64,000 nucleotides of DNA, taken from positions 1 through 64,000 of IMG/VR virus record IMGVR_UViG_3300037258_000590. The stretch is one strand, 5' to 3'. Positions 32,135 to 63,605 of this stretch are shown here, piece after piece (position 1 is the first letter of the stretch; each line of letters starts with the position of its first letter). The position numbers were made by a program, and so were the translations under genes. The notes beneath the pieces are model-generated. The model had not been told where the DNA came from and ran no database searches. It saw nothing but the letters and a program-made list of their open reading frames with translations.

Positions 32135-32593
32135 CTACCAACTAGAAGCGTTTACTCCGACCGAGCCCGTAGCGAACTGTACCGTGTCGCCGTTAGCCAC
32201 CCCGGTGATGCTGGACGTGAGCGCGCCCTGCAGGCGGCGCAGCGGGGTCCCGGCGGTGTCCCAGATCTCGATTGCGGTGATGGTGGCCCAGTTTCCGGTG
32301 GCGCTCCAGCTGACCGCGTTGGTATTGGTCTGCTGACCGCCAGACGGGGCGCCGCAGAACTGCGAGCCGAGCGAGGAGCCGCCCGCGGTGTACCCGGGGC
32401 AGTTCCCGGACGTCGCCTCGGTGCCATTGGAGGTATTACTGCCCTGGCTGGTCATCAGCCGCAGGTGATACGGCGGCGTGAACGCGAACGCCGAGCCGCC
32501 GGAAGTCCCCGGCGTGACGGTGAATGTGGTGGTAGAGGAGAACATGGCCTGCAGCAGCGCGTTAACCAGGTTCTGGTCCGTCATGTTCGCCAT
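32135..32593 (-). CDS. Small beta-rich virion structural protein (paralogue of 62716)
   Basis: HLRLMT...GTE...GYTAGG...N.NA.SW...TI.AIEIWD...LRR..GAL...I..V.NGDT.QF. Confidence 0.8.
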   Translation of the reverse strand: MANMTDQNLVNALLQAMFSSTTTFTVTPGTSGGSAFAFTPPYHLRLMTSQGSNTSNGTEATSGNCPGYTAGGSSLGSQFCGAPSGGQQTNTNAVSWSATGNWATITAIEIWDTAGTPLRRLQGALTSSITGVANGDTVQFATGSVGVNASSW

Positions 32594-38900: not shown

Positions 38901-39194
38901 GGCGAGAACTTCTCGCGCCGCGGCCAGCAGCTGACGCTGAGCGGTCCCCGCCACGCCTGGCGTGGTAATCTGCACGGGTAGAACTACAGTTCGATTTGAG
39001 GCCCTGCGCCCGAAAGGCCTCTCTCCGTCCAACAGTAGTGACGCTACGTAATCAGAGGTGGGCTGCCCGGCTCCCAGGTCCATCCCGGGGGCGTAGTCGA
39101 TCTTGAACATCGCCCCGGCGCACGCGGGGATCTGCGAGATGACACCGCCGCCCATCAGTTCAATGAGGTTGCCGAGTACGAGAGAATCGGCCAT
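35991..39194 (-). CDS. Distal-tail-like minor tail protein with inserted Gly-rich domains (1067 aa)
   Basis: Directly after TMP; SNRTVVLPVQI, LLLDCFRAQP, L..PALPYGRS; two copies of the W..PA..T.L..E.WGAGG.G Gly-rich domain. Confidence 0.8.
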   Translation of the reverse strand: MADSLVLGNLIELMGGGVISQIPACAGAMFKIDYAPGMDLGAGQPTSDYVASLLLDGERPFGRRASNRTVVLPVQITTPGVAGTAQRQLLAAAREVLAQVIDQDVWTLTWTRDPGAGTRLPLLLDCFRAQPSKPVYDPLSEQHGGVMRITLTIPALPYGRSDTQFTPAFTGAVPQTPTPPPPPAPVTLDTYATISGPQFSQSTQCVVGPFTALWDPDSFGDPGGQVTPLSYTAKFTTPLNLASMASLQFWFGLGSRYYPQLEYPGRIHGTGIAITLTDTSGATLSLSRDYLRMSVTPVAQAPVFSRISVPFPAFNPLFSYNAVASYTLTITNRQDRGISRLSWVTAYLDSLTAQPSTQTVTPVTRGNLYTLYGLLGTARAPVSMSFQQPPSPGTPTTITATGAGNYTVPAATAWLKVETWGAGGAGASRTTAGDGGGGGGGEYAREDIFPAQAGQVVPYNVGPGGTPGAAPADGGGTTFGPGPAGSLVVQANGGKSAAQNSITGGAAGGGSVNSVSNPGGAGRTASGSVGGGGGSSGGTGSPGQSPMGTAAVLFTAAGTDSWVCPAGVTQVLAECWGAGGSGGSGGVSTNGAGGGGGEYAAALVAVTPGNTYAPVVGAGGAGTSSGNSSGNAGASSVFAGDSVTVTAHGGQAGHAAFSGGNGAGGTGSSSSTHFDGGQGGSAYPYSGGGGSSAGSATRGNAGNGYGSPGSPPADGGGGGAGSGVSSSAGTAGQAPGGGGGGTFSSVDSGAGAAGRVRLTYPGGSPTNNGAAAVAGGGAGGAGGASGNTTGSAGSQPGGGGGGADMSTVSQAGGAGGAGQIIITPFASAPFKNLIAHRPPLGAVKTFQPLVSVGGGSDAPDGTHEYRMPQPVTGLNADFGGTYTIYLIASSLSGSGTRTITLTVNQYEYSGGPKYSVSTLPVTVTPAQITNGVITAGVLTLPVKAVAPDNTGSYYTVTPLDTSTSDRFSDCVFLDTQGQTVVVNEPTTGYINYFIDEPQPNLSLGYILGSNGGRPDAISVLDNSLVSGGPLAVEPADGDNQLFAYSADGSAPVIAVSYYPRWFYDRFQ

Positions 39195-47112: not shown

Positions 47113-47205
47113 TGCGTAACCACATCCTTACAATTTTAGTGGCCGTCGCATGCCAGGATGCATGGTTTCGGTCCGTGTATATAGGTTTTGGTGTACACTA
47201 GAAAT

Positions 47206-48117
47206 ATGACAGTCGTGCGCGCCATATGCCCAGTCGGGGACCACCCGTTTGAGTTCACGGTCAAGCAAGGTAAACGGCCGATGTACTGCACTCCGGAACA
47301 CGCGTGGAAGGCTGGCGCTGAGCGAGCGAAGATCCGTAACACAGCATTGGACCGGAGAACATGCTCGCGATGCGGAGTGGAGAAGCCGAGTAGTGAGTTC
47401 GGCAGCCCCACAGCGCCTTACTGCCGTCCGTGCCATACCGAATATGAACGAGAGCGCAGGTGCACCCGGGGCAAGCAGGACCCGGCCTACACCAGGATGC
47501 TCAACCTGCGCCGGTACGGCCTGACCCCGGAACAGTTCGCCGACCTGCTGACAGCTCAAGGCAGTCAGTGCGCGATCTGCCGGACACAGACGCCTGGGGG
47601 TCAGGGCTGGCATGTCGATCACGATCATTCGTGCTGCAACACCAGGAAGCAGAGCTGCGGAAAGTGCTTTCGAGGAATCCTGTGCTCGCGGTGCGATATC
47701 GCGATCTGGAATCTGCGCGATGACCCGGTGATCATCCAGGCTGCGCTCAGGTACGTGCTGACGCACCTGAAAAAGCAGTCGGGTACCGAGGGGCTCCTGG
47801 CTTACTTCGGAATGCCGGATAACCGGGGCGAAGGCAGCTCCAGTGCGAAGATGACTGCTGAGATCGTCGCAAGCTGCCGGCGCCGTTTCGTAACGGGGGA
47901 GACTCAGGCTGCCCTCGCCGCTGAGTGCGGGGTGACTACCGGCGCGATGAGTAACGCGATCCGCGGCAAGACCTGGCCAGGGGAGGTAAACGGGGTAGCG
48001 CCCGTCTCGCGGAACCTGAAGCCCAGCCAGGGAACGAACGAGTTCCGGGCGCAGATGGTTGCGGCTGGCCGCAAAGGTGCTGCCGCGCGCTGGCATCCGG
48101 AGTCCTCGCAGATTTAG
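47206..48117 (+). CDS. Endonuclease VII-family nuclease with N-terminal Zn fingers and C-terminal HTH; possibly inactive
   Basis: YGLT..QF...Q...CAIC...WHVDHDH.CC...C.KC.RG.LC..C; CD instead of CN; probably leaderless (TACACT 6 nt before ATG). Confidence 0.85.
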   Translation: MTVVRAICPVGDHPFEFTVKQGKRPMYCTPEHAWKAGAERAKIRNTALDRRTCSRCGVEKPSSEFGSPTAPYCRPCHTEYERERRCTRGKQDPAYTRMLNLRRYGLTPEQFADLLTAQGSQCAICRTQTPGGQGWHVDHDHSCCNTRKQSCGKCFRGILCSRCDIAIWNLRDDPVIIQAALRYVLTHLKKQSGTEGLLAYFGMPDNRGEGSSSAKMTAEIVASCRRRFVTGETQAALAAECGVTTGAMSNAIRGKTWPGEVNGVAPVSRNLKPSQGTNEFRAQMVAAGRKGAAARWHPESSQI

Positions 48118-49773: not shown

Positions 49774-50836
49774 CTAAATCCGTTCCAGCAGTTTAAGGAA
49801 CCGCTTGGCGTTGTTCTCGAAGGTCCGGTCTGCTACAGCTAGCCGTGCCTTCTCGGCGGCAGCCTCACGTTCCTGATCATGCTTGAGCCACCACCGCAGC
49901 TTCTCGCTGGCGTCTCCGGGCCCGGCAAATGCTGGCAGCATCGGGAACAGCTCGTCCCCTTCGGGCCGGGGATCACGCAGGAAGAACAGCCCGCAGGCGG
50001 CCATCTCCACTTCGCGCGGGCCAAGGGCCGAACCGTGCCAGGAGCCCCCGTCCTCGGTCTCGCGCCGGTAGAAATTCAGGCCCGCCCGAGCGTTCCGGTA
50101 GACCTCGGCGGCTTCGTCGTTGTTCACGCAGTCGGGGTTGCCGAGCCCGGTCCCGACGAACCCGGCCAGCGGTGAGCCCGGCGGTACCGAGCCCCAGTCG
50201 TTGCCGCCGAGCAGCACGTCAAGCCCGTGCAGGTCCATCGCCTCGAAGAACTCGACCCTGCTCTTGAACGCGGTGCCGATGAACGCCAGGTCGGCGGCTA
50301 GCTCCTGGTTCAGCGGCCCGGTCCGCGGGTGGTGGACGGCTGGCCGGTAGGCGTGCGGCATGTACTCACTGACCGCGTACTGCCGGAACCGGTCCAGGTT
50401 GGCCGGATCGTTGAGCAGGTTCAGGTGCGCGAGCTGGCCGCGGGTCAGCTGCTCCTCGTCTTGGTAGGGCGATTCCGTGTGCAAGATGACGATCGTGTGC
50501 CGCCGGTCGCGCAGCAGCTGCATGGTCCCGGCGTTAAGGAAGAACCCCGAGATGAACAAGATGACGTCCGGCCAGAACGTGTAGCACGCATGGCTCAGCC
50601 CTTGCATGGCCGCCGCGAACGCCTGCTGCGGGGTCATCGCCGCCCGGCAGATCGGGTGCCCGGCTTCGTCCTTTTCACCGGTATCAATCATGGCCATGTT
50701 ATAGAAAATAAGCCGGTCGTAAATTCAGGTTGTACACGGCAACTTCACAGCCCAGATCGTTCAGTGCCTCCGTCCAACCCGCGTATACGTCATGTACGGA
50801 AAAGTCCGGGCCAGGGTGCACGACTAGAATACGCAT
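49774..50836 (-). CDS. CgeB-type (GT-B) glycosyltransferase, split by a frameshift near 50700-50725
   Basis: 5' piece MRILVVHPGPDFSVHDVYAGW..AL..LG.EV..YNLN (stop at 50699) continues in the +1 frame as DRLIFYNMAM...; ADLAFIGT, Y....GLN, REVEMAACG. Confidence 0.8.
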
Positions 50837-51037: not shown

Positions 51038-52906
51038 TCACGTGAAACCCTTGGCGCTTTGCCACGCAGCCAGCGCCCTGGCCACGCGCTCGTTCGCGCC
51101 GACGTGACCTCGTTCCGGCCAGTCTCCTATCACGGCGTTGAGCGCCTGGTCCGCAGGGTCCGCTACCGGGCCCGGGGGTGCCGGCACTGGTGCTGGTGGT
51201 ACCGGAACCGGCACCGGAGCGGGTGCCGGTGCTGGCGGTACCGGAACCGGGAACGGCTTTCCGGTGATCGCCTGGAACTCCGCGGCGAACGCGGTCAGGT
51301 CGACGCCCGCCTGGAATTCGGCGGTATTAAGCTGCTCCTCCCAGACCGGGAACCACAGTTCCTCCGCCTCGTGCGCCCAGAATGCGTCGGTGAAGCTGGT
51401 CTCCTCCGAATTGTGGGAGGCAAGACCCTCAGCAAAGAATGTCCTTGTGTCGGTCTGCAAGGCAATTACTTCCTGCTCGCCAACGAAAACTTTGCTAGTC
51501 AGCTGTACAGTGCGACTAATGTTGAGTCGTCCGAGAAGTTCTGGGTGGAACTTGTCGAGCAGCCGGGCGGGCCGCACAGAACCGAGGAATCGCAGAATCT
51601 CTGGCTTACGATAGATGTGCAGGCGGTGGATGTCCTTCCGCCCGGGGTGGCGGACCCCCTTAGAGGCTGCCCGTGAATCAACGTAATGTTTCGGGTTGAA
51701 TTCAAGTTCTTTCAGGCAGCGCTCTGTCTCGGCGAGCATGGCATTATTCGCCTGCGTAAATCCCAGCGTGGACGCAACAATGCCCTTTGCCTTGCCGCTG
51801 AGGTCCTGCTGCCGGAAATCCCCTTTACCGTCGAACGCGGCAGCGAGATAACCAGCTTCCCGGGATGTTCCGGTATCCCACACGTCAAGCGGCTTAATGA
51901 TCCGGGAAGCCCGCTTGCCAGTAAGCCGCAGATCCTCAGTTGCTAGCCAGTAGACTCTGTTTCCGAGGGTATGAACCAGCCATTTGTGCTCAGCCGAGCA
52001 TCGCACTTTCGTACCGTCGTTAAACTCCAGGTCATAGCAGGGCCTGACGATTTTCTGTGCAGATTCCACGCATGCTCGCCGGTAAAGCCGGCCACCCGAT
52101 CTGCCCCTGTAATTTTCTTCATCAAAGGCAAGAAGCCCGTCGCCTTCCTGAAGATCCCCCGCTGGAATCCAGTGCAAGTTAGATGTGAGTATGCGCATAC
52201 TTGAGTCTACGCACCAGGTGACGAACTTCTCATCACCGGCCATGGCCGGAGAGCCGCCCGCCACCTCGGCACCGTAGCCGCCGCACACGATCGAATGGCC
52301 GCCTTCGACCGGGCTGCCTTTCACGTAGTCCCACGGCCGCCCGGCGTCGAACTGGCTCTCCTGGACTTCCTGCACGTTGATGCCGAGCCACAGCACGCCG
52401 CCAGCAGCGATCGCCGCCTGAACCTCCCTGGCGTTCGCATGGTCGACCGCGGCGAACCCGACGAGCTTGCTGCCATCCGGGCCCGGGTTCTTGACCAGGT
52501 ATTCCAGCAGCGTCTGAATATCCATGCCGTTGTCCGCAGGCGACCCGGGTCCGGTTGTACCGGGGTCCCCAGAGGGATCGAATTGCGGGTTCTGTGTCCG
52601 GTATATTGCTAGTACGTCCGCCCAGCCCGGATAGACCTCATGCCCGCCGATCGCCTTAGAAATGACCCGGCGGATGTTCGCGAAAGTCACGGCAACACAA
52701 TCGCCGCATCCCGGAAAGCCTGGGTGAACACTATCATCGGGGCCGTTTCCGAGCATGAGCCAGCCGCCGTTCATGGCAGTAAGATAATCGACAGCCGCCG
52801 GGACAGCGAGAGCTGAGTGGCGGATGGCCGAGAACCGGATAGCCGGAGCACGCTTGGGCGGACGGCGGCCGTACGTGCCAGCGATGCGGGGAGCGGGCAT
52901 GGTCAT
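51038..52906 (-). CDS. Papain-like (C1/C39-related) cysteine peptidase with an intein and Pro-rich C-terminal extension
   Basis: AGGAG SD, TGATG coupling; LGN...GDCV.V..AN, DNG, GGHSI..GGY, FVTW|. Confidence 0.8.
   Translation of the reverse strand: MTMPAPRIAGTYGRRPPKRAPAIRFSAIRHSALAVPAAVDYLTAMNGGWLMLGNGPDDSVHPGFPGCGDCVAVTFANIRRVISKAIGGHEVYPGWADVLAIYRTQNPQFDPSGDPGTTGPGSPADNGMDIQTLLEYLVKNPGPDGSKLVGFAAVDHANAREVQAAIAAGGVLWLGINVQEVQESQFDAGRPWDYVKGSPVEGGHSIVCGGYGAEVAGGSPAMAGDEKFVTWCVDSSMRILTSNLHWIPAGDLQEGDGLLAFDEENYRGRSGGRLYRRACVESAQKIVRPCYDLEFNDGTKVRCSAEHKWLVHTLGNRVYWLATEDLRLTGKRASRIIKPLDVWDTGTSREAGYLAAAFDGKGDFRQQDLSGKAKGIVASTLGFTQANNAMLAETERCLKELEFNPKHYVDSRAASKGVRHPGRKDIHRLHIYRKPEILRFLGSVRPARLLDKFHPELLGRLNISRTVQLTSKVFVGEQEVIALQTDTRTFFAEGLASHNSEETSFTDAFWAHEAEELWFPVWEEQLNTAEFQAGVDLTAFAAEFQAITGKPFPVPVPPAPAPAPVPVPVPPAPVPAPPGPVADPADQALNAVIGDWPERGHVGANERVARALAAWQSAKGFT
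51410..52213 (-). mobile_element. Intein 3 (268 aa), degenerate LAGLIDADG
   Basis: CVDSSMRILT; block B SAEHKW; GYLAAAFDGKG; ends ASHN followed by Ser+1. Confidence 0.9.
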
Positions 52907-53325
52907 CAGGTAGCTCCTACCGTGAGGTTCAGCCGGGCACCGAAGTACGTGACGCCCGCGTATTCGATCCGGCTGTAGTTTCCTGCCGAGACCGGTTCGC
53001 AGAAATCTACTGCGCCGCCGAGCGTGGGGTCGATCATGATGCCGCCCGGGACAGACTGCCCCTCGCCATCGCCGACGCCGAGATACGTATCCAGGGCGCG
53101 CTGGGTTTTCTCGGCCGGAGCCGCGTCGGAGATGATGATCAAGACGATCAAGCTCAGGTTCACCGCGCCGTCCATGGTGACCCCGTAGGTGATGAGCGGC
53201 TGGCCGGGCAGCACGACCGAGCACGGCGGTGACACCTGGTCCCGGGCCTGAGCGTCGCAGCGCAGCCCGGTCTGCGCGGTGATCTGCGTGGCCAGCGCGT
53301 TGCGGATCGCGGTCAGGTTAGCCAT
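52906..53325 (-). CDS. Tail terminator protein
   Basis: LTAIRNALA..I.......V.PPC.VV.P...LD.Y...G..S....I..D.TLGG. Confidence 0.8.
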   Translation of the reverse strand: MANLTAIRNALATQITAQTGLRCDAQARDQVSPPCSVVLPGQPLITYGVTMDGAVNLSLIVLIIISDAAPAEKTQRALDTYLGVGDGEGQSVPGGIMIDPTLGGAVDFCEPVSAGNYSRIEYAGVTYFGARLNLTVGAT

Positions 53326-56176: not shown

Positions 56177-56320
56177 TCAGACTTCCCCTTTCAACCGGAT
56201 GACCACGCCGGGCAGGTGCAGCCATGCACTGTGGTCTTTGACCCAGAACAAGCCGAAGCGCAAGTCATGAGAATCGACCAGGATCCGGCGCGTGCGTGAG
56301 TGTTTCCGGATATGCCTCAT
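56177..56320 (-). CDS. Small hypothetical protein
   Basis: ATGA coupling to head-tail adaptor stop. Confidence 0.55.
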   Translation of the reverse strand: MRHIRKHSRTRRILVDSHDLRFGLFWVKDHSAWLHLPGVVIRLKGEV

Positions 56321-57258
56321 ACGCCTACCTTTTTCCGCCCGCGGATAAACGGCCGCAGCAATTCTACCAGCCACGGGTTACTTTGTATTCTTGCGATGCC
56401 GATATCGGAAACCCCGGCCACGCCGAACGGGGCATCCTTGGATTTGAACACGTCGGCGGACAGGATCCGGCAGGCTTCGGGTACCTGCCAGGGCACCGCG
56501 GGCCAGCCCCATGTAGCGGCTATCTGCACCCTGTTAACCGGTGCGAGCGGCCACAGGTACGGGAACGTGACCCCGGAGTTGATGACCCGGACGTGCTCAT
56601 ACGGCCGGGGCTGCCCGGTAGACCCGGTGTTGAACGTGTCTTTTCCCAGGTAAAGCTGATAGTCAGTGTTCTGCACCCAGGGCTGCTCATAAGTTCCGTC
56701 ACCGTCGAAGTCGACCTTGAACGTGCTGACCGACACGACGTCATCGATCCGCAGTTCGTAGATGTCCTGAGGTACGAAAGTCCGGGTTTCGGTGATCCGG
56801 TTGAAATGGCGTCCGCAATATGAGTTCAGCCACCCGCTGGATGCCGCAATGGCGAACTGCATGTTGCTGTTGTCCGTGGCGTCAGTAATCCCGAGCCGGT
56901 CGTTCATCTCCTCCAGGCCGACGTACCACAGCTGGGAAGCGGCTGCCGGGAGAACCCGCCAGGTACCCGGCTGGACGTCGGAGACGGCTCCGGTGCCGAC
57001 CCACGCGAAACCCCACAGCCCGTCCGCTCCTGGTACGGACGGGGAGCACGCCACGGACAGCGTGTACTTGCCGGTGCCTACCTTGATGACATCAGCCGGA
57101 GAGAGCCCGGCGTAAGTGTGCGTAACCGCGACGTTAGCCGGGTCGGTGATGATGCATGAAACCGCTGTGGGGTCAGCAGGAACGCCGCCGGCATCGGTGA
57201 ACGTATTGGAGATCAGCGCGATTTCGTTTACGTCATCGTAGAAAACCGTGGCCGTCAT
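56317..57258 (-). CDS. Head-to-tail adaptor (gp6/gp15-like) with N-terminal Ig-like domain
   Basis: GAGGAG SD; F.D..G.P.DP...G.Y.......G.W...W.GTG (Ig-like); Y....E...LGI.D......AI.A.S..L..YCGR.F...W..VP..V..A..I. Confidence 0.82.
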   Translation of the reverse strand: MTATVFYDDVNEIALISNTFTDAGGVPADPTAVSCIITDPANVAVTHTYAGLSPADVIKVGTGKYTLSVACSPSVPGADGLWGFAWVGTGAVSDVQPGTWRVLPAAASQLWYVGLEEMNDRLGITDATDNSNMQFAIAASSGWLNSYCGRHFNRITETRTFVPQDIYELRIDDVVSVSTFKVDFDGDGTYEQPWVQNTDYQLYLGKDTFNTGSTGQPRPYEHVRVINSGVTFPYLWPLAPVNRVQIAATWGWPAVPWQVPEACRILSADVFKSKDAPFGVAGVSDIGIARIQSNPWLVELLRPFIRGRKKVGV

Positions 57259-57309
57259 CCGGGGCTCCTCACGTCGGAGACCCCGCACGCCCGGTGGCTG
57301 GCCTGGTCT

Positions 57310-60300
57310 TCAGGATACGCCGGGGAAGGTCTGGAACGGCTGGGTCACGCCAGCTACCGCGGTGCCGCGTGCGGTAACTGAAGCCGCTGACACAGAAATC
57401 TTCGTGACACCGTAAGCGGTGCTGAAGCCCTTCACCTGCGGCGGATGAGTCAGGCCCGTCGCGGTCAGCCTCGCGGTGCCGGCCAGTGCTCCGGCGCCTT
57501 GCTGCGCAGCCAGCGTAATCAGGGCTGCGATCCCGCCCAGAGCTGCCGCAGATCGCAGTACAGTGCCGGAGCCGAGTGACCCGGCAGCCCCGAGCACGGC
57601 TCCGGCACCGCCGGCGGCAGCCCCGGCCGCGGTCAGCGCTCCGGCTGCACCGAGCAGGCCGGCGCCCGCGATGCCGCCTCCGGATGCGAGCGAAGCTGTC
57701 GCGCTCAACGAGGTAACCGCCCCGGGCACGGCAGCGCTCGCGAGCGATCCCGCGGCAGCAAGCGCCGACCCGCTGGACGGGATCGCCCCGAGCGATCCTG
57801 CGGCGCCGATCGTCGTAACGACGCCGAGGGCGGCTGCGCTCGCGAGCGATCCCGCACTGCTGAGGATTCCACCCGGGCCCTGAACGGAAACGCTGCCAAG
57901 CGATCCGGCCGCGGCCAAGGCCGCCGGAGCTGCGATCGCGGATACCGCTGCCAGCGAGCCAGCGGCAGCCAGGCCGGAACCGCTGGCCGGATTGGCGCTG
58001 AGCGACCCGGCTGCAGTCAGTGTCGTGATAGCACTGAGCACCGCCGCCGCGGTCAGCGAGCCCGCTGCGGCTAGAGCAGCCGGGGCCGCCACGGCTGAGG
58101 AAGCAGCCAGGAGCCCGGCCGCGGCCAGCACAGCGGGTACCCCGGCGATTACCGCGGGCGCGGCCAGCGAGCCAGCCCCGCTGAGCACCGCGCCGCCCGC
58201 CGGGGTTCCGGTCAGTGACCCGGCCGCGGCCAGGGCGGTAATCGCGCCGAGGACACCGGCGGCCGACAGCGCTCCCGCACCCCCGAGCGAACCAGCTGCG
58301 CCCTGTGTCGCGACGTCACCCAGAGAACCTGTCGCGCTCAGCGTGACAAGCGCTGCCTGGACCGCCATGACGCCCAGTGATGCCGCACCGCCGAGCGTGA
58401 CACCAGCGCTCAGGATAACCGCGGTACTCAGTGATCCGGCTGCCGCCAAGGCTGCAGGCGCGGCCAGAGCCGCTGCGGTACCCAGCGAACCCCCGCCGCT
58501 GAGCACGGAACCCATGACCGAAGCTGCCGCCAGCGATCCCGCGGCCCCGGTCGTTGCCCCCGCGCCCTGGCCGGCGCCGTTGCCCGCAGACCCTGCCGCC
58601 ATCAGGACCGCAGGCGCGCTGAGGACGCCCGCTGTAGCCAGCATCCCCGCCGCGCCGAGCGTGCCGCCCGCACCCTGGATCGTGACCGTACCGAGCGACC
58701 CAGCCGCGCCGAGCGTGCCGCCCGCACCCTGGATCGTGACCGTACCGAGCGACCCAGCCGCGCCGAGCGTAACGCCTGCACCCTGGATCGTGACAGCATT
58801 CAGCGATCCCGTCGCGCTGAGCGTGACAATTGCGTTCTGGGCTGCCGTGGCTGCCAGTGAGCCAGCCGCGCCAAGCGTGACGCCCGCACTCTGGGCTGCT
58901 GCGGCGGCCAGTGATCCGGCAGCCGCCAGTCCTGCGGGCGCGCCGAGCATTTCTGCGCTGGCTAGTGACCCGGCCGCGCCCAGGGCAGTGATCGCGCCGA
59001 GCATTTCTGTGCTGGCTAGTGACCCGGCCGCGGCCAGGGCGGTAACGGCGCCCTGCAGGGCAGCCGGGGCTAGCGATCCAGCGCCGCCGAGCAGGCCTCC
59101 GGCATCCTGGACGGCGGCATTACCAAGCGAAGCTGCCGCACCGAAGGCCGTGCCCGCACCCTGGGTGGCGGCTGTGGCAGCCGATCCGGCGGCGCTGAGA
59201 GCCGCGCCCGCGCTCTGAGTGGCTGCCGTGGCAACCGACCCCCGGGCGGGCAGCGTGGCGATGCCCTGCAGGGCAGTCGGGGCAGCGAGGATGAGCACCC
59301 AGTCCGGGTCGCCCTGGCTGTTGTTTCCCCAGGTGCTGGAGTTGTACGACGAACCGGCCGTGACTGAGGTTTTCGCCCCGGTGATCGGGTCCCCCCGGTA
59401 CGCCTGGTATCCGGAGACCATCTTGGCCTGGTCAATGCCGATGGTCGTGGCGTGCGACAGGTAGATCAGTGCCAGGCTGGAACCCGAGCCGCTGTCCGGG
59501 GTCCGGCTCGCGGTGACGAACGAATCGGTCGTCGCGGCTTCGTACTGGCCGGAACCGCCGCCCGAGACGAACGTGGCCGCCCGCGAGCCCCGGCCGCTGG
59601 TGACCAGCGCCGATGCGGTGTCCGGCATCAGGGCCTGCCAGCCGGGCAGCGATTCGACCAGCGTGCGGATGTTCGCGGCGTTGTTGGCGTAGAACCAGTC
59701 GGTAGAGGAAGCAGCCAGCGCGGTAGCGGCCCATTGCCAGGTTGACTCAGAACCTTGCACGACACCGCGGGCGCCCGACGTGATCGCGTGCCAGGCGTCC
59801 TGCCTGAAAGCCCGGTCAAAAGCTGTAGAACCAGTGCCGCCTGCGTAAAGCGGGCCGCCCTGGTAAAAATACCCGTCGAGCTGGATAACCGGAATAGGAT
59901 CAGGCTCGCCCCAGGCGTCCTCTATACCTAGGTACGTGAGGTTATATGTGTAATTCCCGTTAAAGGCGGCATGGTTATTCCCCCAGTACTGGACCGTGCC
60001 GGTGGTACCCGTACCGAGGTCTTCACGGGAATCAGATTCCGCGTAATTGTGGATGCTGATGATGTGCGTATCGCCGCCGCCGCGCAGCCCGGTCAGCAGC
60101 GATTCATATAGCGTGTCCGTTGCTCCGGGGCTTCCGCCCCCGCTTCCGAGCGTGCCGCCAGAATTGCCGAAATAGTCATTCCCGACCATCCAGATTATGT
60201 TCTTGGTGGTCGCGTACCGGGCAGCGAGAGCGGCGCCGTACTGGCCGAACTGGGTTGCGGTCAGTGAGGTTAGCGCTCCGCCCGTGGCGAAATCTCCGGG

Positions 60301-62640
60301 GCCGTTGTAGCCGATATTGAGCATGGCCGTCATGCCGTTACGTGCGCATGCGGTCAGGAAGTAATCGACCCTGGCCCAGAATGTGCTGTTCAGCCCGATC
60401 GCCGCCGAGCCCGCTACCCCGGCGGTCGTGGCTGCAGTGCCGTTGACCGTGAACGGGAACACGCCGTCCCAGGTGCGGCCGTCCGCGAAAGCGCCGCCGT
60501 TTTCTGAGTTGCCGAGCGGGTCAAGGTAGATGGCGGTGAAACCCTGACCGCCGCGGGCGTTGCAGTACGTGTCGATGTCGGTCTGGTACGTGCCCGCCCA
60601 CCGGCCCGCGTTGGGGATCAGCCCCCACGGGTTGTCGCCCAGCAAGAACCGCGGGCTGCCGTTCTGGTCAGCGAAATACCCGGTGCCGCCGCCAGCGAGG
60701 CCGGTGATGACCAGCGGGCCTTGCGTGGCGGTCAGTGACCCGGCCGCGGTCAGGGTCGCGCCCGCTGCTTGAGCCGCGGCGGTACTCAGCGATGCGGTTC
60801 CGGCGATAGCCGCGCCTGCGCCGGTCACTGCCACGCCCTGGATGGCGATGATGAGGCCCGCGCCTAGAGCGGTGCCCTGCGTTGACCAGTGCCCGGCATC
60901 GGCAAGCGCGGCGGGCCCGGCTGAGGCCTGGCTGTTGGACTGGGTGAACAGGACAGCTGCTCCGGAGGCGGGCAGCTTGCCCTGGCTTGTCCATCCAGAG
61001 CCGGTCTCAGTCCAGGTGAGCGTGGCGCTAGCGCGTTCCTGGGCGAAGACGGAAACCGCGAACTCGCCGTAGGCACCCAGGATTCCGGTGGTGATAGAGA
61101 ACGCGACGGTTCCCGTGCCGCTGCCGGTCTGCTGAACGGCAGAGACGTCAAGCGGAGACGTCAGGTTCGCGCCGGCCAGTTCATACATGAAGCAGGTCAG
61201 TACCGGGGTACCGGAGAGCGTCTGGGTGAACGTGGGCGCGGCATCGCTCCCTGCGGCGGTCTTGACCCAGGCGTCAACTACAGCCTTGGACGTGCCGGAC
61301 GGATTGTTCCCGACGCTGCCTGAAATGAGCCGGGACCAGCCTGTAGCGCTGGTGGAGATATTCGGCGTCTCCGCAGTCGTTGACCCGGCTGAGACGATAG
61401 CCAGCAGCAAGCTGCCTGCGGTCGGGGCCTGGCCGTAGACGGCGGTAAGCGGGCTCGACGTACCGCTGGCTTTGCCGGCACTGCCGACCAGTGTCACCGG
61501 CAGGTGCACAGCCAGGGTAAGCGGCTGGGTAGCCGTGGCCGCCACGCTGTCGGTCACTTCGACGGTGAACGCAGAGCCGCCTTGGCCGGAGGACGGGGTG
61601 CCGGTGACGGCTCCAGTCGATGAGTTTAGCGATGCCCAGGACGGCAGTGCCCCGGACGATACCGACCAGGTGTACGGGGGGGCCCCGCCGGAAGCGGCCA
61701 GCGTCTGGGAGTAGGTGATGCTCGTGGCTGCCGCGGGGAGCGCCGTAGTGGCTACGGCCAGCGCTGACGGAGCCTGGACTTCGAAAGCGATAGCGCCGTA
61801 GAAGTCGTTGGCCTGGGTCCAGACCAGGCTGGTGGTGCCAGCCGAGGAAGGGTTGGTGCCGGCGGCGGTGTTGCCGGCGGCGGAGTTCGTGCCGGCGTCC
61901 TTTTCGTACCGTTTGGTGCCGGTGGTGAACGCGACGCCGCCCGCTCCGCATGTCATGAACGCCAGGCACAGGTTCCCTGACGTAGTGCTGGGCACGGTGA
62001 TCGTCGCGCCGGCGACGAACTGAGCGAAGCCGGTGACGGTGGCGCTTTCTCCGCCAGACCCGGTGACGGACACCGACCCGCCGGTGATCACGTCAAACGT
62101 GGCGCCGGTCACGGTGATCGTGACGGTCTGCGCACCGGCCGCCGGGGCGTCGATCCTGAAGACTTCAACGAACCCGGCGGTGCCGGTCAGCCCGGTGAAC
62201 CCGCTGGACTGCTTGCCCATCGAGGTCATCGCCGTGCCGCCGTACGTGGCGGCTGTGGCATAGGCGGTGTCGGCAGCGCCTCCGTTGTTGCTGACGGCGA
62301 GGCCCGCGTATACCGCTGACGGCGTTCCGGCGGGGGTATGGGTCCACGTCAGCGGACTGGTGGCGCTGGAGGTGCCCGCTGAGGACGGCCCGGCGGCGTC
62401 GAACGCGACGCCTGCGCCGCCGGCGATAAGCCGGACCGGGCGCCCGGAGCGCAAATATCCGATGATCATGCCAGGGTGGCGTTCGCCGCGCCCCCAGGTC
62501 TTCAGGTAACGCCGGGTCAGCACCCAGGGAAGGACAGCAGGCGGCGGTGGCGGCCGGAACCGCCGCGGGCACGCCAAAGCCAGCATGAGGGCCAGCGAGA
62601 AGCGAAGGAGAACCCAGGCGGCTCGCGCCGGAGCAGCCAT
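57310..62640 (-). CDS. 1776-aa fibre-like protein: beta-sandwich domains, He_PIG Ig repeat, DUF4038/GH140 apiosidase-like hydrolase with C-terminal beta domain, long Ala/Gly repeat stalk
   Basis: GGAGG SD; YF....G.P.FLLGD.PW, G..GF.AI, FW.RVD......G, Y...LA.RY....IIW..GND, P.PV......Y, R...W..I.SGA.G...G, W..L.PD, DP.TG, DWVL.L; TTALP......YSQTL.ASGG.PPYTW. Confidence 0.85.
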   Translation of the reverse strand: MAAPARAAWVLLRFSLALMLALACPRRFRPPPPPAVLPWVLTRRYLKTWGRGERHPGMIIGYLRSGRPVRLIAGGAGVAFDAAGPSSAGTSSATSPLTWTHTPAGTPSAVYAGLAVSNNGGAADTAYATAATYGGTAMTSMGKQSSGFTGLTGTAGFVEVFRIDAPAAGAQTVTITVTGATFDVITGGSVSVTGSGGESATVTGFAQFVAGATITVPSTTSGNLCLAFMTCGAGGVAFTTGTKRYEKDAGTNSAAGNTAAGTNPSSAGTTSLVWTQANDFYGAIAFEVQAPSALAVATTALPAAATSITYSQTLAASGGAPPYTWSVSSGALPSWASLNSSTGAVTGTPSSGQGGSAFTVEVTDSVAATATQPLTLAVHLPVTLVGSAGKASGTSSPLTAVYGQAPTAGSLLLAIVSAGSTTAETPNISTSATGWSRLISGSVGNNPSGTSKAVVDAWVKTAAGSDAAPTFTQTLSGTPVLTCFMYELAGANLTSPLDVSAVQQTGSGTGTVAFSITTGILGAYGEFAVSVFAQERASATLTWTETGSGWTSQGKLPASGAAVLFTQSNSQASAGPAALADAGHWSTQGTALGAGLIIAIQGVAVTGAGAAIAGTASLSTAAAQAAGATLTAAGSLTATQGPLVITGLAGGGTGYFADQNGSPRFLLGDNPWGLIPNAGRWAGTYQTDIDTYCNARGGQGFTAIYLDPLGNSENGGAFADGRTWDGVFPFTVNGTAATTAGVAGSAAIGLNSTFWARVDYFLTACARNGMTAMLNIGYNGPGDFATGGALTSLTATQFGQYGAALAARYATTKNIIWMVGNDYFGNSGGTLGSGGGSPGATDTLYESLLTGLRGGGDTHIISIHNYAESDSREDLGTGTTGTVQYWGNNHAAFNGNYTYNLTYLGIEDAWGEPDPIPVIQLDGYFYQGGPLYAGGTGSTAFDRAFRQDAWHAITSGARGVVQGSESTWQWAATALAASSTDWFYANNAANIRTLVESLPGWQALMPDTASALVTSGRGSRAATFVSGGGSGQYEAATTDSFVTASRTPDSGSGSSLALIYLSHATTIGIDQAKMVSGYQAYRGDPITGAKTSVTAGSSYNSSTWGNNSQGDPDWVLILAAPTALQGIATLPARGSVATAATQSAGAALSAAGSAATAATQGAGTAFGAAASLGNAAVQDAGGLLGGAGSLAPAALQGAVTALAAAGSLASTEMLGAITALGAAGSLASAEMLGAPAGLAAAGSLAAAAAQSAGVTLGAAGSLAATAAQNAIVTLSATGSLNAVTIQGAGVTLGAAGSLGTVTIQGAGGTLGAAGSLGTVTIQGAGGTLGAAGMLATAGVLSAPAVLMAAGSAGNGAGQGAGATTGAAGSLAAASVMGSVLSGGGSLGTAAALAAPAALAAAGSLSTAVILSAGVTLGGAASLGVMAVQAALVTLSATGSLGDVATQGAAGSLGGAGALSAAGVLGAITALAAAGSLTGTPAGGAVLSGAGSLAAPAVIAGVPAVLAAAGLLAASSAVAAPAALAAAGSLTAAAVLSAITTLTAAGSLSANPASGSGLAAAGSLAAVSAIAAPAALAAAGSLGSVSVQGPGGILSSAGSLASAAALGVVTTIGAAGSLGAIPSSGSALAAAGSLASAAVPGAVTSLSATASLASGGGIAGAGLLGAAGALTAAGAAAGGAGAVLGAAGSLGSGTVLRSAAALGGIAALITLAAQQGAGALAGTARLTATGLTHPPQVKGFSTAYGVTKISVSAASVTARGTAVAGVTQPFQTFPGVS
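58649..58800 (-). repeat. Near-perfect 54-bp coding repeats (TIQGAGGTLGAAGSLGTV) within a longer degenerate 18-aa repeat region
   Basis: Direct repeats seen in DNA; degenerate copies span about 57470-59280. Confidence 0.8.
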
Positions 62641-62715: not shown

Positions 62716-63153
62716 TCACATACCGCCAGCAGAAATCGCCTCAGCCGCCACCTGGAATGTGTTGCCGTTGGCCACGGTGATCGGCTGTCCGTTCCAGGCG
62801 CCGAACCAGACCCGCAGCGGGGTGGAGTCCACGATCTCCAGTGACACGATGGTCCACGAGGACCCGGAGCCGTTGGTCCAGGAGATGGCGGTGGTGTGCG
62901 GGCACGTGACGTTCGACCCGGCTGAGCTGGCTGCCGACTGGGTGGAGAAGGCGGTGCCGCCTGTGGTGTACCCGGTGCCGGTCAGCTCGGTGCCTGCCGA
63001 GGAGCCGGTACTGGCCGTGGAGAACAGCTTCAGCTTCATCGCCGAGCCGCCGAGAGCGGCGAATGAGGTGCCAGGCACGCCCGAGGCGCCGGTCGGCAGG
63101 GTGGCGTTGAGGATCTTGGTCGACATGGCCGCATCCCAGGCTGTCTGCGCCAT
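62716..63153 (-). CDS. Small beta-rich virion structural protein (paralogue of 32135)
   Basis: KLKLF...GTEL...GYT.GG...AISW...TIV.LEI.D...LR.W.GA....I.V.NG.T.Q. Confidence 0.8.
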   Translation of the reverse strand: MAQTAWDAAMSTKILNATLPTGASGVPGTSFAALGGSAMKLKLFSTASTGSSAGTELTGTGYTTGGTAFSTQSAASSAGSNVTCPHTTAISWTNGSGSSWTIVSLEIVDSTPLRVWFGAWNGQPITVANGNTFQVAAEAISAGGM

Positions 63154-63158
63154 CTAGA

Positions 63159-63605
63159 TCACGCCCCCGCCGGCTGGATCACGGTACTGCCGCGCATGAC
63201 GGTGATGATCAGCGGCCTGCAGACGGTGCAGTTCCTGACGCCCTTGGCGCAGTGCGCACCTGGGCAGTCCGGCACCGTCGCGCCGGAGAACAGCGGGTGG
63301 GTGCCGGGTTCGAACAGCGGGTGATGCGCGTCGGCGGTGGCGCCCTGCCAGGTCCGGCAGCTGCCCGGTTCCGGGCACGGCTCGTCATCATGCGCGCCGG
63401 AGCAGGCGTTCGCCGCCGCGGCGTGATCATGGTCCTGGTGGCAGCAGCCGGGGTTCGTGCTGGCCGGATTGCAGGTGATGGCGGCGTCGATGCCAGCATG
63501 CGAGCAGCCGTCTTGGTGCTGGCCCGCGACGGCGAGGTAATCCGGCGGGCATGTGCACTCCAGGAATGCCTGGGTCATGCAGCCGGCACACTGAACGTGA
63601 AGCAC
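63159..63605 (-). CDS. Cys/His-rich metal-binding protein (paralogue of 32595)
   Basis: VQC..C...CCHQDHDH...ANAC...H.EPC...CTVCRP. Confidence 0.8.
   Translation of the reverse strand: MLHVQCAGCMTQAFLECTCPPDYLAVAGQHQDGCSHAGIDAAITCNPASTNPGCCHQDHDHAAAANACSGAHDDEPCPEPGSCRTWQGATADAHHPLFEPGTHPLFSGATVPDCPGAHCAKGVRNCTVCRPLIITVMRGSTVIQPAGA

What the first reader, a model, noticed from the sequence alone, without database searches (positions are those of the whole stretch)
57310..62640. Giant fibre-like protein displaying a GH140/DUF4038 apiosidase-like hydrolase, encoded among head/neck genes
Seen: beta-sandwich domains, a He_PIG Ig repeat (about 61505-61755), a complete DUF4038-type TIM barrel plus C-terminal beta domain (about 59285-60715), about 600 aa of 18-residue Ala/Gly repeats, and a short C-terminal anchor-like segment. 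The gene sits upstream of the head-tail adaptor, far from the tail tip genes. Established: the characterised GH140 enzyme cleaves apiose linkages in plant rhamnogalacturonan-II, and phage depolymerases are usually beta-helix or other GH families at the tail tip. Inference: a head- or neck-mounted glycanase or lectin on a long stalk, acting on a host surface glycan or tethering virions to plant-derived polysaccharide. This may be an undescribed virion appendage system together with the 63159/62716 module.
Basis: partly seen in the sequence, partly recalled or inferred. Interest (0 to 1): 0.78.

Follow-up and report, generated by a model that had tools for sequence, protein, structure and literature searches.

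The report
Phage fibre protein carrying GH140-like glycosidase
A 1,776-residue gene of an uncultivated high-GC phage really does encode a complete GH140-type sugar-cutting enzyme fused to Ig-like domains and a long 18-residue repeat stalk. It belongs to a large, undescribed phage-only branch of that enzyme family, usually encoded between a small fibre-subunit gene and the head-to-tail adaptor gene.

Summary
ORF 57310..62640(-) carries He_PIG (E 2e-12), a complete GH140/DUF4038 barrel plus beta-sandwich (Pfam E 2.7e-26; AF2 pLDDT 96; Foldseek top hits are all solved GH140s, E 6e-22) and about 33 copies of an 18-residue repeat.

New findings:
- The window is the first 64 kb of a 210-kb IMG/VR viral contig, probably from an actinobacterial phage.
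- The enzyme belongs to a phage-specific GH140 clade: 33 IMG/VR contigs, at least 160 clusters at 50% identity, none in 50,697 isolated phages.
- The beta-4 Asp is kept, but the beta-7 carboxylate is Asp where cellular GH140s have Glu.
- The upstream 145-aa gene is a Gp80-family fibre subunit. The 63159 ORF is not.
- A Gp80-like gene lies upstream in 18 lineages. The adaptor gene lies directly downstream in about 11.
- The closest sequence relatives nevertheless sit in tail-fibre clusters.
- C-terminal 18/20/22-residue arrays are family-wide. AF2 models ours as a thin three-sided beta-solenoid with only moderate confidence.

Verdict: most likely a virion appendage with an active glycosidase against a host surface glycan. 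Neck-proximal mounting is plausible but unproven. A link to plant RG-II is unsupported. This is a new variant of a known kind.

The parts
57310..62640 (-). Whole ORF, 1,776 aa from ATG 62640 (stop included). Alternative starts: GTG 62523 (database call, 1,737 aa), ATG 62469, TTG 62454
   Evidence: GGAGG lies 7 nt upstream of ATG 62640
62413..62640 (-). N-terminal extension (residues 1-76) absent from homologues. It contains a hydrophobic stretch, and whether it is translated is uncertain
   Evidence: homologues P0003, P0024, L014, L023 and L035 start at the motif equivalent to residues 78-88; GC3 is inconclusive
61756..62412 (-). Domain D1 (residues ~77-295), the typical N-terminal module of the family; beta-rich, fold not modelled here
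   Evidence: jackhmmer finds D1 at the N-terminus of the GH140 ORFs of L002, L012, L014, L018, L019 and L035, and as separate ORFs beside stand-alone GH140 genes; Atlas look-alikes are mostly viral proteins of 190-230 aa
61507..61749 (-). He_PIG Ig-like domain (residues 298-378)
   Evidence: PF05345 E 2e-12, 47.8 bits against a cut-off of 24
60721..61503 (-). Domain D2 (residues 380-640). The He_PIG-D2 block is 83% identical to L001. D2 is also the N-terminal domain of other 1,000-1,270-aa repeat proteins encoded next to stand-alone GH140 genes
   Evidence: blastp; repeat content of those neighbours
59641..60720 (-). GH140-like (beta/alpha)8 barrel (residues 641-1000)
   Evidence: Pfam PF13204; family profile against solved GH140s: 8t9w 2e-35, 3kzs/5msy 2e-29, 4qfu 3e-28; AF2 pLDDT 96.3, pTM 0.94; Foldseek ranks 1-16 are all GH140, E 6e-22 to 1.5e-18, TM 0.63-0.75
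60175..60177 (-). Asp822, C-terminal end of barrel strand beta-4: putative acid/base
   Evidence: 127 of 129 clade members have Asp. Aligns with the Asp of the GGD motif of 8t9w and BT1012. Asp in 23 of 24 cellular and 34 of 34 viral loci. The strand position comes from DSSP of the model
59875..59877 (-). Asp922, C-terminal end of strand beta-7: putative nucleophile. This position is Glu in cellular GH140
   Evidence: 105 Asp, 13 Glu, 10 Asn (and 1 Pro) among 129 members; Glu in 23 of 24 cellular loci, against Asp 27, Glu 5, Asn 2 in viral loci
59275..59640 (-). C-terminal beta-sandwich of the GH140 module (residues 1001-1122)
   Evidence: AF2 strands; second matched stretch to residues 356-425 of 8t9w; precomputed PF12904 hits in homologues
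57481..59253 (-). About 33 tandem 18-residue Ala/Gly/Leu/Ser/Thr units (residues ~1130-1720) with a hydrophobic residue every sixth position
   Evidence: autocorrelation; register; 54-nt DNA repeats; AF2 gives three short strands per 18 residues for residues ~1229-1462, pLDDT 70-86, pTM 0.40; no significant PDB fold match, though the list is dominated by beta-solenoids
57313..57480 (-). Non-repeat C-terminal tail (residues 1721-1776), modelled as disordered and not conserved
   Evidence: pLDDT below 50; the closest homologues end differently
62716..63153 (-). 145-aa Gp80-family fibre subunit gene, 75 nt upstream of the giant ORF
   Evidence: PF23140 hits in 8 of 32 homologues, best 1.3e-8; Atlas features 0.96 with 220 shared, 96 of 100 hits PF23140, structure TM 0.76/0.82; 576 homologous clusters
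56317..57288 (-). 323-aa head-to-tail adaptor-like gene, 21 nt downstream; about 120 aa longer at the N-terminus than the adaptors of isolated relatives
   Evidence: phrog_442 E 4e-20; tblastn; the Shagrat and phiPsal1 adaptors are 188-190 aa
32135..32593 (-). [quoted passage not shown]
   Evidence: A3 profile E 3e-20

Best explanation
The ORF encodes a modular surface appendage of an uncultivated, high-GC, long-tailed phage that probably infects an actinobacterium. From N to C it has: a family-typical N-terminal module (D1) that probably docks it to the particle; an Ig-like He_PIG domain; a second beta-rich domain (D2); a complete and probably active GH140-like glycosidase (barrel plus beta-sandwich); and a long thin stalk of about 33 eighteen-residue units. 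It is made together with the Gp80-family fibre subunit encoded just upstream and the adaptor encoded just downstream. Its most likely place is at or near the head-tail junction, though relatives may carry it at the tail end. The enzyme cleaves a host cell-surface glycan, acting as a depolymerase or receptor-destroying activity. Its specificity need not be apiose. Shown: the domain identities, the conserved catalytic-type residues, the phage-only clade and the conserved gene neighbourhood. Inferred: presence in the virion, mounting site, catalytic activity and substrate.
For: GH140 identity. Active-site conservation within the clade: Asp822 in 127 of 129 members, Tyr897 in 129 of 129, Asp or Glu at 922 in 118 of 129, with positions at the ends of beta-4, beta-6 and beta-7 of the model. 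This points to selection for catalysis rather than binding alone. Viral origin: the contig is IMGVR_UViG_3300037258_000590, 210,383 bp, and 32 further IMG/VR loci carry the clade. Among 185,579 species genomes there is one close hit (50%), on a 3.4-kb MAG contig; all others are at most 33% identical. Structural context: a Gp80-family gene lies upstream on the same strand (0.5-3.4 kb upstream in most) in 18 lineages (hhalign between the two Gp80-like subfamilies, probability 91%, E 1e-6). Adaptor homologues lie within 300 nt downstream in about 11 lineages. L013 runs portal-protease-capsid-...-GH140-adaptor-...-tail. L001 places it after tape measure, Dit, a Gp80-like gene and a K1-lyase_C protein. 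Gp80 proteins are proven fibre subunits in GP4, VP1 and A1002 (PMC13730344). Modularity: D1 or D2 plus repeat arrays also occur in separate 1,000-1,270-aa proteins next to stand-alone GH140 genes. Host: adaptor hits to Rhodococcus and Pontimonas phages, Gly_rich_2 minor tail proteins, GC 62-74%, and a Rugosimonospora MAG contig.
Against: There are no proteomic or imaging data, and no relative in any isolated phage. Gene position conflicts between lineages: next to the adaptor in some, at the tail end in L001, at the end of the structural block in L002, and upstream of the portal in L005. In phiPsal1 the capsid-adaptor slot holds non-structural glycosyltransferases. Asp replaces Glu at beta-7, and this may alter or weaken catalysis. 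The catalytic residues of GH140 could not be checked in the literature available here. The stalk model is only moderately confident, and AF2 renders the same repeat as helix in the first ~100 residues. With a tail of roughly 300 nm, a neck-mounted enzyme would be far from the cell at adsorption.
Confidence: 0.5

Rival explanations
1. Chain-like fibre. The C-terminal 18-residue array is not a self-folding stalk but a 'rope'. Each unit, or pair of units, binds a dimer of the Gp80-family protein by beta-strand augmentation, as in podophages GP4 and A1002. This would give a long beaded fibre with a glycosidase at its base.
For: The Gp80-family gene is immediately upstream and there is a second paralogue in the window; A1002 likewise uses two fibre proteins. 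In the A1002 relative KPP25 the rope's docking domain has quasi-repeats of about 18-23 residues, close to the 18/20/22-residue periods seen across this family. The units share a hairpin-like motif. The A3-type partner goes with period 18 in 4 of 4 loci, and the distant c2-type partner with periods 20, 22 or other. AF2 gives no confident single fold (pTM 0.40).
Against: AF2 folds about 13 turns alone as a regular three-strand solenoid at pLDDT 70-86. The hexad periodicity fits a solenoid core. Gp80-like genes also accompany stand-alone GH140 genes that have no array (L020, L027, L029, L037). The pairing of partner type with period is confounded by shared ancestry. There is no sequence similarity to known ropes. 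Known chain-like fibres belong to podophages with nozzles, whereas this phage has a tape measure.
Confidence: 0.18
2. Ordinary distal tail fibre or depolymerase. The protein is mounted at the tail tip or baseplate like other receptor-binding depolymerases, and its gene merely sits away from the other tail genes in this lineage.
For: The closest homologue (62% identity over 78% of the query region searched; He_PIG-D2 block 83% identical) is encoded after tape measure, Dit and other tail genes. Mosaic exchange is evident: the syntenic relative L006 is only 42% identical in the enzyme. Phage glycosidases normally act at the tail tip (established knowledge). A Gp80-like paralogue sits at the tail-distal end of this window.
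Against: Adjacency to the adaptor is conserved in about 11 lineages, even where capsid genes are not nearby. L001 has a different N-terminal module in place of D1, and the N-terminal module is the part expected to set the docking site. The window already has two large Gly_rich_2 minor tail proteins after the tape measure.
Confidence: 0.17
3. Non-structural glycan-processing enzyme. The gene belongs to a phage glycan cassette (glycosyltransferases, methyltransferase, sugar-nucleotide dehydratase). It trims phage-made or host wall glycans during infection or lysis and is not part of the particle.
For: Glycosyltransferase and dehydratase-like genes lie nearby in the window and in relatives. phiPsal1 has glycosyltransferase and methyltransferase genes in the same slot. 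A hydrophobic N-terminal extension follows a good ribosome-binding site.
Against: The 1,776-aa size, the Ig-like domain and the long repeat array are typical of particle surface proteins. The gene is paired with a proven fibre-subunit family, and L001 places it within a tail-fibre cluster. The N-terminal extension is absent from homologues.
Confidence: 0.1
4. Catalytically dead lectin. The barrel only binds a glycan and serves as the receptor-binding head.
For: Asp replaces the Glu that cellular GH140s have at beta-7, and 10 of 129 clade members have Asn there.
Against: The window's protein keeps both carboxylates. Asp822, Tyr897 and Arg946 are nearly invariant across 129 members at only 33% mean column identity. 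That pattern fits an active site under selection.
Confidence: 0.05

Closest known systems
GH140 apiosidases: BT1012 of Bacteroides thetaiotaomicron (PDB 5MSY/3KZS), the mangrove-metagenome GH140 (8T9W) and BVU_2644 (4QFU)
   Same: Same two-domain fold, a (beta/alpha)8 barrel plus a C-terminal beta-sandwich (Foldseek E 6e-22 to 1.5e-18, TM 0.63-0.75; profile E 2e-35 to 3e-28). Same Asp at the end of beta-4 and the same conserved Arg.
   Different: 16-19% identity in the structural alignments. The beta-7 carboxylate is Asp, not Glu. The module is embedded in a 1,776-aa phage protein with Ig-like domains and a repeat array. It is not in a polysaccharide-utilisation locus. Substrate unknown; BT1012 cleaves D-Apif-beta-1,2-D-GalA of RG-II (10.64898/2026.03.13.711244).
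Chain-like fibres of podophages GP4, VP1 and A1002: Gp80-type fibre dimers on a rope protein (PMC13730344; Zheng et al. 2023 as cited there)
   Same: A Gp80-family subunit gene lies next to a long protein with docking-size repeats of about 18-22 residues. There are two Gp80-like paralogues, as with A1002 gp40 and gp41.
   Different: The host phage has a tape measure, so it is long-tailed and has no nozzle. The repeat protein also carries an enzyme. The repeats are Ala/Gly-rich and modelled as a solenoid. No binding has been shown. Neither tblastn nor profile search finds similarity to the podophage proteins themselves.
Phage glycan depolymerases, including GH5-like TIM-barrel phage proteins (BFVD hits such as Erwinia phage phiEaP8, Klebsiella phage SopranoGao, Pseudomonas phage Skulduggery)
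   Same: A glycoside hydrolase domain inside a large phage structural-type protein, with a GH-A-type barrel.
   Different: Those hits are only fold-level (TM 0.3-0.56, at most 16% identity, E no better than 9e-9). None is GH140. Most characterised depolymerases are trimeric beta-helix tailspikes (established knowledge).
Neck or collar appendages: phi29 gp12 collar appendages, lactococcal neck passage structures, T4 whiskers (from my own knowledge, not tested here)
   Same: Accessory fibres mounted at the head-tail junction; some bind or degrade wall polymers. The gene here lies next to connector genes.
   Different: No sequence or fold relationship was found or tested. The mounting site here is inferred from gene order only.
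Left-handed beta-helix (hexapeptide-repeat) proteins
   Same: 18 residues per turn made of three hexads, each with an inward aliphatic residue followed by a small residue. AF2 gives three short strands per turn.
   Different: No Pfam Hexapep hit at E up to 0.1. No significant PDB fold match. Relatives have periods of 20 and 22. Handedness and oligomeric state are unknown.

Membership tests
GH140 / Pfam PF13204 (Apiosidase, DUF4038) | Sequence match above the curated family threshold | tested here: met
   93.4 bits against a cut-off of 26.5, E 2.7e-26. The clade profile hits all three solved GH140 sequences at E 2e-35 to 3e-28.
GH140 / Pfam PF13204 (Apiosidase, DUF4038) | (beta/alpha)8 barrel followed by a C-terminal beta-sandwich, superposable on solved GH140 structures | tested here: met
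   AF2 pLDDT 96.3, pTM 0.94. Foldseek ranks 1-16 are GH140 chains, TM 0.63-0.75; the next hits are BVU_0362 and then GH5 and GH35.
GH140 / Pfam PF13204 (Apiosidase, DUF4038) | Family-typical carboxylates at the ends of beta-4 (Asp) and beta-7 (Glu) | tested here: inconclusive
   The beta-4 Asp is present (Asp822). The beta-7 position holds Asp922, whereas 23 of 24 cellular GH140 loci have Glu. The published catalytic assignment could not be read, so the roles are inferred from GH-A topology.
GH140 / Pfam PF13204 (Apiosidase, DUF4038) | Beta-D-apiofuranosidase activity | not testable with these tools
   Needs an enzyme assay.
He_PIG Ig-like domain (PF05345) | Sequence match above threshold | tested here: met
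   47.8 bits against a cut-off of 24.
Gp80 fibre-subunit family (PF23140), for the neighbour 62716..63153 | Sequence or profile membership and the same fold | tested here: met
   The window's own hit is below threshold (18.5 bits against 27). However, 8 of 32 close homologues hit only this family, best 1.3e-8. Atlas features 0.96 with 220 shared, 96 of 100 neighbours PF23140, structure TM 0.76/0.82.
Chain-like fibre (GP4/VP1/A1002 type) | A rope segment whose repeated sites each bind a Gp80-type dimer by beta-augmentation | tested here: inconclusive
   The repeat period is compatible. AF2 alone folds part of the array as a solenoid. No complex prediction was possible.
Chain-like fibre (GP4/VP1/A1002 type) | Podophage tail with an adaptor-collar or nozzle as docking platform | tested here: not met
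   The window encodes a 2,031-aa tape-measure-like protein, a major-tail-like protein and Gly_rich_2 minor tail proteins. No nozzle was found.
Hexapeptide-repeat left-handed beta-helix (PF00132) | Match to the hexapeptide profile | tested here: not met
   No Hexapep hit at E up to 0.1. Only the periodicity and the AF2 strand pattern resemble it.
Beta-helix tailspike depolymerases | Right-handed parallel beta-helix catalytic domain | tested here: not met
   The catalytic module is a TIM barrel.
Virion structural protein | Presence in purified particles | not testable with these tools
   No cultured relative exists in 50,697 phage records.

The most novel reading that the evidence does not exclude
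A long-tailed phage builds a chain-like fibre. The 33-unit array of the giant protein acts as a rope threaded through dozens of Gp80-family dimers. It is anchored at the head-tail junction through D1 and the enlarged adaptor, with a GH140-derived enzyme at its base. The switch of the beta-7 carboxylate from Glu to Asp marks a new substrate specificity, for example an actinobacterial furanoside-containing wall polymer. That would extend the rope-and-bead fibre beyond podophages and define a new functional subfamily of GH140.
Probability: 0.15. Interest if true: 0.85.

Novelty: new variant of a known kind. Interest (0 to 1): 0.6.

Why it matters
GH140 has a single characterised activity, cleavage of apiose linkages in plant RG-II by gut and soil bacteria. 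This work finds a large phage-only branch: at least 160 clusters at 50% identity and 33 IMG/VR contigs. It has a distinctive active-site change and a conserved three-gene setting (Gp80-like subunit, GH140 protein, adaptor). No cultured phage and no paper in the searched library carries it.

If the enzyme is active, it is a new source of glycosidases aimed at bacterial, probably actinobacterial, surface glycans. It would also be a candidate for a depolymerase mounted at an unusual place on the particle.

The family-wide 18/20/22-residue arrays, together with a Gp80-type partner, make a concrete and testable case. Either the rope-and-bead fibre recently seen in podophages also exists in long-tailed phages, or these arrays are a new thin beta-solenoid stalk.

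Tried and rejected
- Megablast of the gene and tblastn of the GH140 module, the 145-aa protein and its L001 homologue against 50,697 isolated phages: no match.
- PHROGs and NCBIfam on the giant protein: nothing.
- phmmer of the N-terminal 590 aa and of the C-terminal array against PDB sequences: nothing usable.
- The Gp80-like profile against PDB sequences did not reach GP4 gp80 itself.
- Atlas search with the array: score 0.83, uninformative.
- The upstream SDR as a UDP-apiose/xylose synthase, which would have tied the locus to apiose: rejected. Its best match is dTDP-glucose 4,6-dehydratase, below threshold.
- ORF 63159..63605 as a second Gp80-like gene: rejected. It is Cys/His-rich and does not align.
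- The N-terminal extension as a lipoprotein signal: the residues before the Cys fit the lipobox poorly and homologues lack the extension, so this is left open.
- Internal duplication D1 = D2: not detectable by BLASTP.
- The search for related loci with the 129-sequence alignment failed for lack of conserved stretches and was repeated with 15 sequences.
- The Ndeh et al. 2017 paper and the 8T9W paper were not available, so published catalytic residues could not be checked.
- Model coordinates are not exposed, so the distance between the carboxylates could not be measured.
- My crude gene caller picked wrong-strand ORFs in high-GC loci. The synteny statements therefore rest on the profile searches of six-frame ORFs and on the database gene calls.
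Full report
**1. The observation**

ORF 57310..62640 on the minus strand is a single uninterrupted reading frame of 1,776 codons. Third-position GC is about 0.8 throughout. An identical copy sits on a second metagenome contig from another sample.

Pfam finds He_PIG at residues 298-378 (E 2e-12) and PF13204 'Apiosidase-like catalytic domain' at residues 655-983 (E 2.7e-26, 93 bits against a cut-off of 26.5). There is also a weak GH5 echo.

The C-terminal third is a true tandem repeat. Identity autocorrelation peaks at 18 residues (0.41), 36 and 54, with a sub-period of 6. About 33 units can be laid in register. TRF finds 54-nt repeats, some 95% identical.

The next gene downstream, 21 nt away, matches head-tail adaptor families. 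It also matches the annotated adaptor or neck genes of Rhodococcus and Pontimonas phages.

**2. The enzyme module**

A search of 1.84 billion representative proteins with residues 641-1122 gave 743 hits at E up to 1e-3 and 160 at E up to 1e-30. Most are 1,000-1,400 aa long, with the enzyme starting near residue 270-300.

A profile of 129 of them hits the three solved GH140 sequences and little else: 8t9w 2e-35, 3kzs/5msy (BT1012) 2e-29, 4qfu 3e-28. GH5 endoglucanases follow near E 0.003-0.009.

AlphaFold2 with this alignment gives a barrel plus C-terminal beta-sandwich at pLDDT 96.3 and pTM 0.94. Foldseek against the PDB returns GH140 chains at ranks 1-16 (E 6e-22 to 1.5e-18, TM 0.63-0.75). 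Next come BVU_0362, GH5 mannanases and GH35 enzymes.

In the model, Asp822 ends strand beta-4, the invariant Tyr897 ends beta-6, and Asp922 ends beta-7. These are the canonical places for the acid/base, the Tyr that supports the nucleophile, and the nucleophile in clan GH-A (established knowledge).

| Position | Clade alignment (129) | Cellular GH140 loci (24) | Viral loci (34) |
|---|---|---|---|
| Asp822 (beta-4) | Asp 127 | Asp 23 | Asp 34 |
| Asp922 (beta-7) | Asp 105, Glu 13, Asn 10 | Glu 23 | Asp 27, Glu 5, Asn 2 |

The single cellular exception at beta-7 is a 3.4-kb MAG contig that is really of the phage type.

The window's protein thus keeps a complete carboxylate pair, but the clade has shortened the putative nucleophile. 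I could not read the published catalytic assignment for GH140. The roles above are therefore inferences.

**3. Where it comes from**

The window is positions 1-64000 of a 210,383-bp JGI contig that IMG/VR lists as a viral genome. Sampled ORFs across the window are nearly all without family. There are a few phage-type hits:
- a LAGLIDADG protein;
- an SLT lysozyme-like protein;
- a 2,031-aa tape-measure-like protein and a major-tail-like protein;
- Gly_rich_2 minor tail proteins.

The host is probably an actinobacterium. The evidence is GC of 62-74%, adaptor relatives in Rhodococcus and Pontimonas phages, Gly_rich_2 tail proteins, and the only close genomic hit, which is in a Rugosimonospora MAG.

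The clade occurs on 33 IMG/VR loci at 27-56% identity. It is absent from 50,697 isolated phage records. Among 185,579 species genomes all other GH140 hits are at most 33% identical. In BFVD the best viral structures are only generic GH5-like barrels (TM up to 0.56, E no better than 9e-9). No paper in the library links DUF4038 or GH140 to a phage protein.

**4. The neighbourhood**

*Upstream.* The 145-aa ORF 62716..63153 is a member of the Gp80 family (PF23140):
- its own hit is sub-threshold;
- 8 of 32 close homologues hit that family and no other, best 1.3e-8;
- the Atlas gives feature score 0.96 with 96 of 100 neighbours in PF23140, and structural TM 0.76/0.82.

The family is abundant and highly conserved (576 clusters). 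A second Gp80-like paralogue lies at 32135..32593, just after the minor tail genes.

A more distant subfamily of 153-176 aa proteins ('c2') is related to it (hhalign probability 91%, E 1e-6). With both profiles, a Gp80-like gene is found on the same strand upstream of the GH140 gene in 18 lineages. In most it lies 0.5-3.4 kb upstream.

*Downstream.* Homologues of the 323-aa adaptor follow the GH140 gene within 300 nt in about 11 lineages, and within 4 kb in five more. In L013 the order is: portal, prohead protease, major head protein, five small genes including a Gp80-like one, GH140 protein, adaptor-like, two small genes, tail protein. The syntenic relative L006 keeps the giant-adaptor order although its enzyme is only 42% identical.

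*Against this.* The closest sequence relatives, L001 and L002 (62-73% identity), place the gene elsewhere. In L001 it follows tape measure, Dit, a Gp80-like gene and a K1-lyase_C protein. In L002 it is at the end of the structural block. L005 has it 7 kb upstream of the portal.

L001 shares He_PIG and D2 at 83% identity but has a different N-terminal module in place of D1. This fits the usual rule that the N-terminal module sets the docking site.

The adaptor here is about 120-135 aa longer at its N-terminus than those of Shagrat and phiPsal1. That extension could be a docking domain, but this is inference only. Finally, in phiPsal1 the capsid-adaptor slot holds glycosyltransferases and a methyltransferase. 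Glycosyltransferases also recur near the GH140 genes. The slot may therefore be a general site for accessory glycan genes.

**5. The repeat array**

C-terminal arrays are a family trait. Of the 75 members whose C-terminal regions (at least 150 aa) were analysed, 68 show clear periodicity:

| Dominant period (residues) | Members |
|---|---|
| 18 | 18 |
| 20 | 26 |
| 22 | 9 |
| Mostly multiples of these | 15 |

The units share a hairpin-like core motif. Similar arrays occur in separate 1,000-1,270-aa proteins that carry D1 or D2 and are encoded next to stand-alone GH140 genes. The enzyme is thus an optional insert in a fibre scaffold.

AlphaFold2 on residues 1123-1776 gives mean pLDDT 62 and pTM 0.40:
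- residues ~1229-1462 form about 13 turns of three short strands per 18 residues, at pLDDT 70-86;
- the first ~100 residues are drawn as helices;
- the last ~90 residues are disordered.

The PDB fold search has no significant hit, but the list consists largely of beta-solenoids. The hexad pattern, an aliphatic residue followed by a small residue every six positions, resembles left-handed beta-helices. However, there is no Hexapep profile hit.

*The alternative reading.* In podophages GP4, VP1 and A1002, Gp80-type dimers are strung on a rope protein by beta-augmentation (PMC13730344). In the A1002 relative KPP25 the rope's docking domain has quasi-repeats of about 18-23 residues. The array here could be such a rope.

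For it: the partner type co-varies with the period. The A3 type goes with period 18 in 4 of 4 loci. Against it: that co-variation is confounded by ancestry, and Gp80-like genes also accompany GH140 genes that have no array. I could not run a complex prediction.

**6. How it most likely works**

- *Shown:* a modular protein with a bona fide GH140-type module, an active-site pattern conserved across a phage-only clade, a conserved pairing with a fibre-subunit family and with the adaptor gene, and a repeat array shared with other fibre-like proteins.
- *Inferred:* it is a particle appendage. D1, perhaps together with the enlarged adaptor, docks it. The enzyme hydrolyses a host surface glycan. The array forms a stalk about 16 nm long if it is a 4.8 Å-per-turn solenoid, or a much longer beaded fibre if it is a rope.
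- *Mounting site:* I favour the head-tail junction over the tail end, but only moderately.
- *Substrate:* nothing supports a plant RG-II target. Given the host guess and the fact that the only known GH140 activity is on a furanoside, an actinobacterial wall polymer is a reasonable speculation.

**7. Comparison and verdict**

The module is a member of GH140 by sequence and fold, with one family feature changed (the beta-7 Glu). The partner is a member of the Gp80 family. The assembly resembles both depolymerase-bearing fibres and chain-like fibres but meets the definition of neither.

It is a new variant of a known kind: a phage structural glycosidase. What is new is the enzyme family, the phage-specific clade with its Glu-to-Asp switch, the conserved position before the adaptor, and the repeat array. 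Interest is moderate to high, and would rise sharply if the rope reading or a neck location were confirmed.

Noticed in passing
window 32135-32593 (-): A second Gp80-family paralogue (profile E 3e-20) lies just 3' of the two Gly_rich_2 minor tail genes. The phage therefore has two Gp80-type subunits, one beside the giant gene and one at the tail-distal end.
   Followed up: partly
window 63159-63605 (-): A Cys/His-rich ORF of 139-148 aa directly upstream of the Gp80-like gene. It has no family hit and is not conserved in L001, L002, L005 or L006. It could be a small zinc-binding protein.
   Followed up: partly
window 49774-50697 (-); contig 65650-66735 (L003:5789-6874), just outside the window: A Glyco_trans_1_2 glycosyltransferase, plus an SDR closest to dTDP-glucose 4,6-dehydratase (below threshold), flank the structural block. 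Relatives carry GT1/4 and GT+FkbM methyltransferase genes near their GH140 genes. Pontimonas phage phiPsal1 has GT-MT-GT2 between capsid and neck genes. This suggests phage-directed glycosylation of the particle or host surface.
   Followed up: partly
window 56317-57288 (-): The adaptor-like protein is 323 aa, against 188-190 aa in Rhodococcus phage Shagrat and phiPsal1. Only residues ~122-316 match those adaptors, so there is an extra N-terminal domain of about 120 aa. The extra domain is shared by the adaptor-like genes that follow GH140 genes in other contigs.
   Followed up: partly
window about 47497-48117 (+), overlapping minus-strand ORF 47128-48096: The database gene call places an Endonuclease_7 (PF02945) gene on the opposite strand inside the tail module. 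The 322-aa minus-strand ORF, which had no family hit, is probably spurious.
   Followed up: no
window 39194-45289 (-): A 2,031-aa tape-measure-like protein with a transglycosylase-like stretch (residues ~1342-1458). It implies a very long tail, roughly 300 nm at 1.5 Å per residue.
   Followed up: no
window 569-3451 (-) and 7899-8807 (+): A 960-aa protein with a LAGLIDADG_3 domain (possibly intein-bearing; L002 has a similar 1,051-aa protein), and a 302-aa protein combining an HTH with an RNA polymerase alpha C-terminal-domain-like region.
   Followed up: no
window 51038-53224 (-): A 578-728-aa protein with no family hit. It is conserved with L006 (50% identity) and L005 (41%) and lies in the same block as the adaptor. 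Function unknown.
   Followed up: no
L022, L026, L027, L030 (genes next to stand-alone GH140 genes): Proteins of about 1,000-1,270 aa with D1- or D2-type N-termini and repeats of about 36-38 residues sit next to stand-alone GH140 genes (directly 3' of them in L022 and L026). The enzyme and the fibre scaffold are therefore fused in some phages and separate in others.
   Followed up: partly
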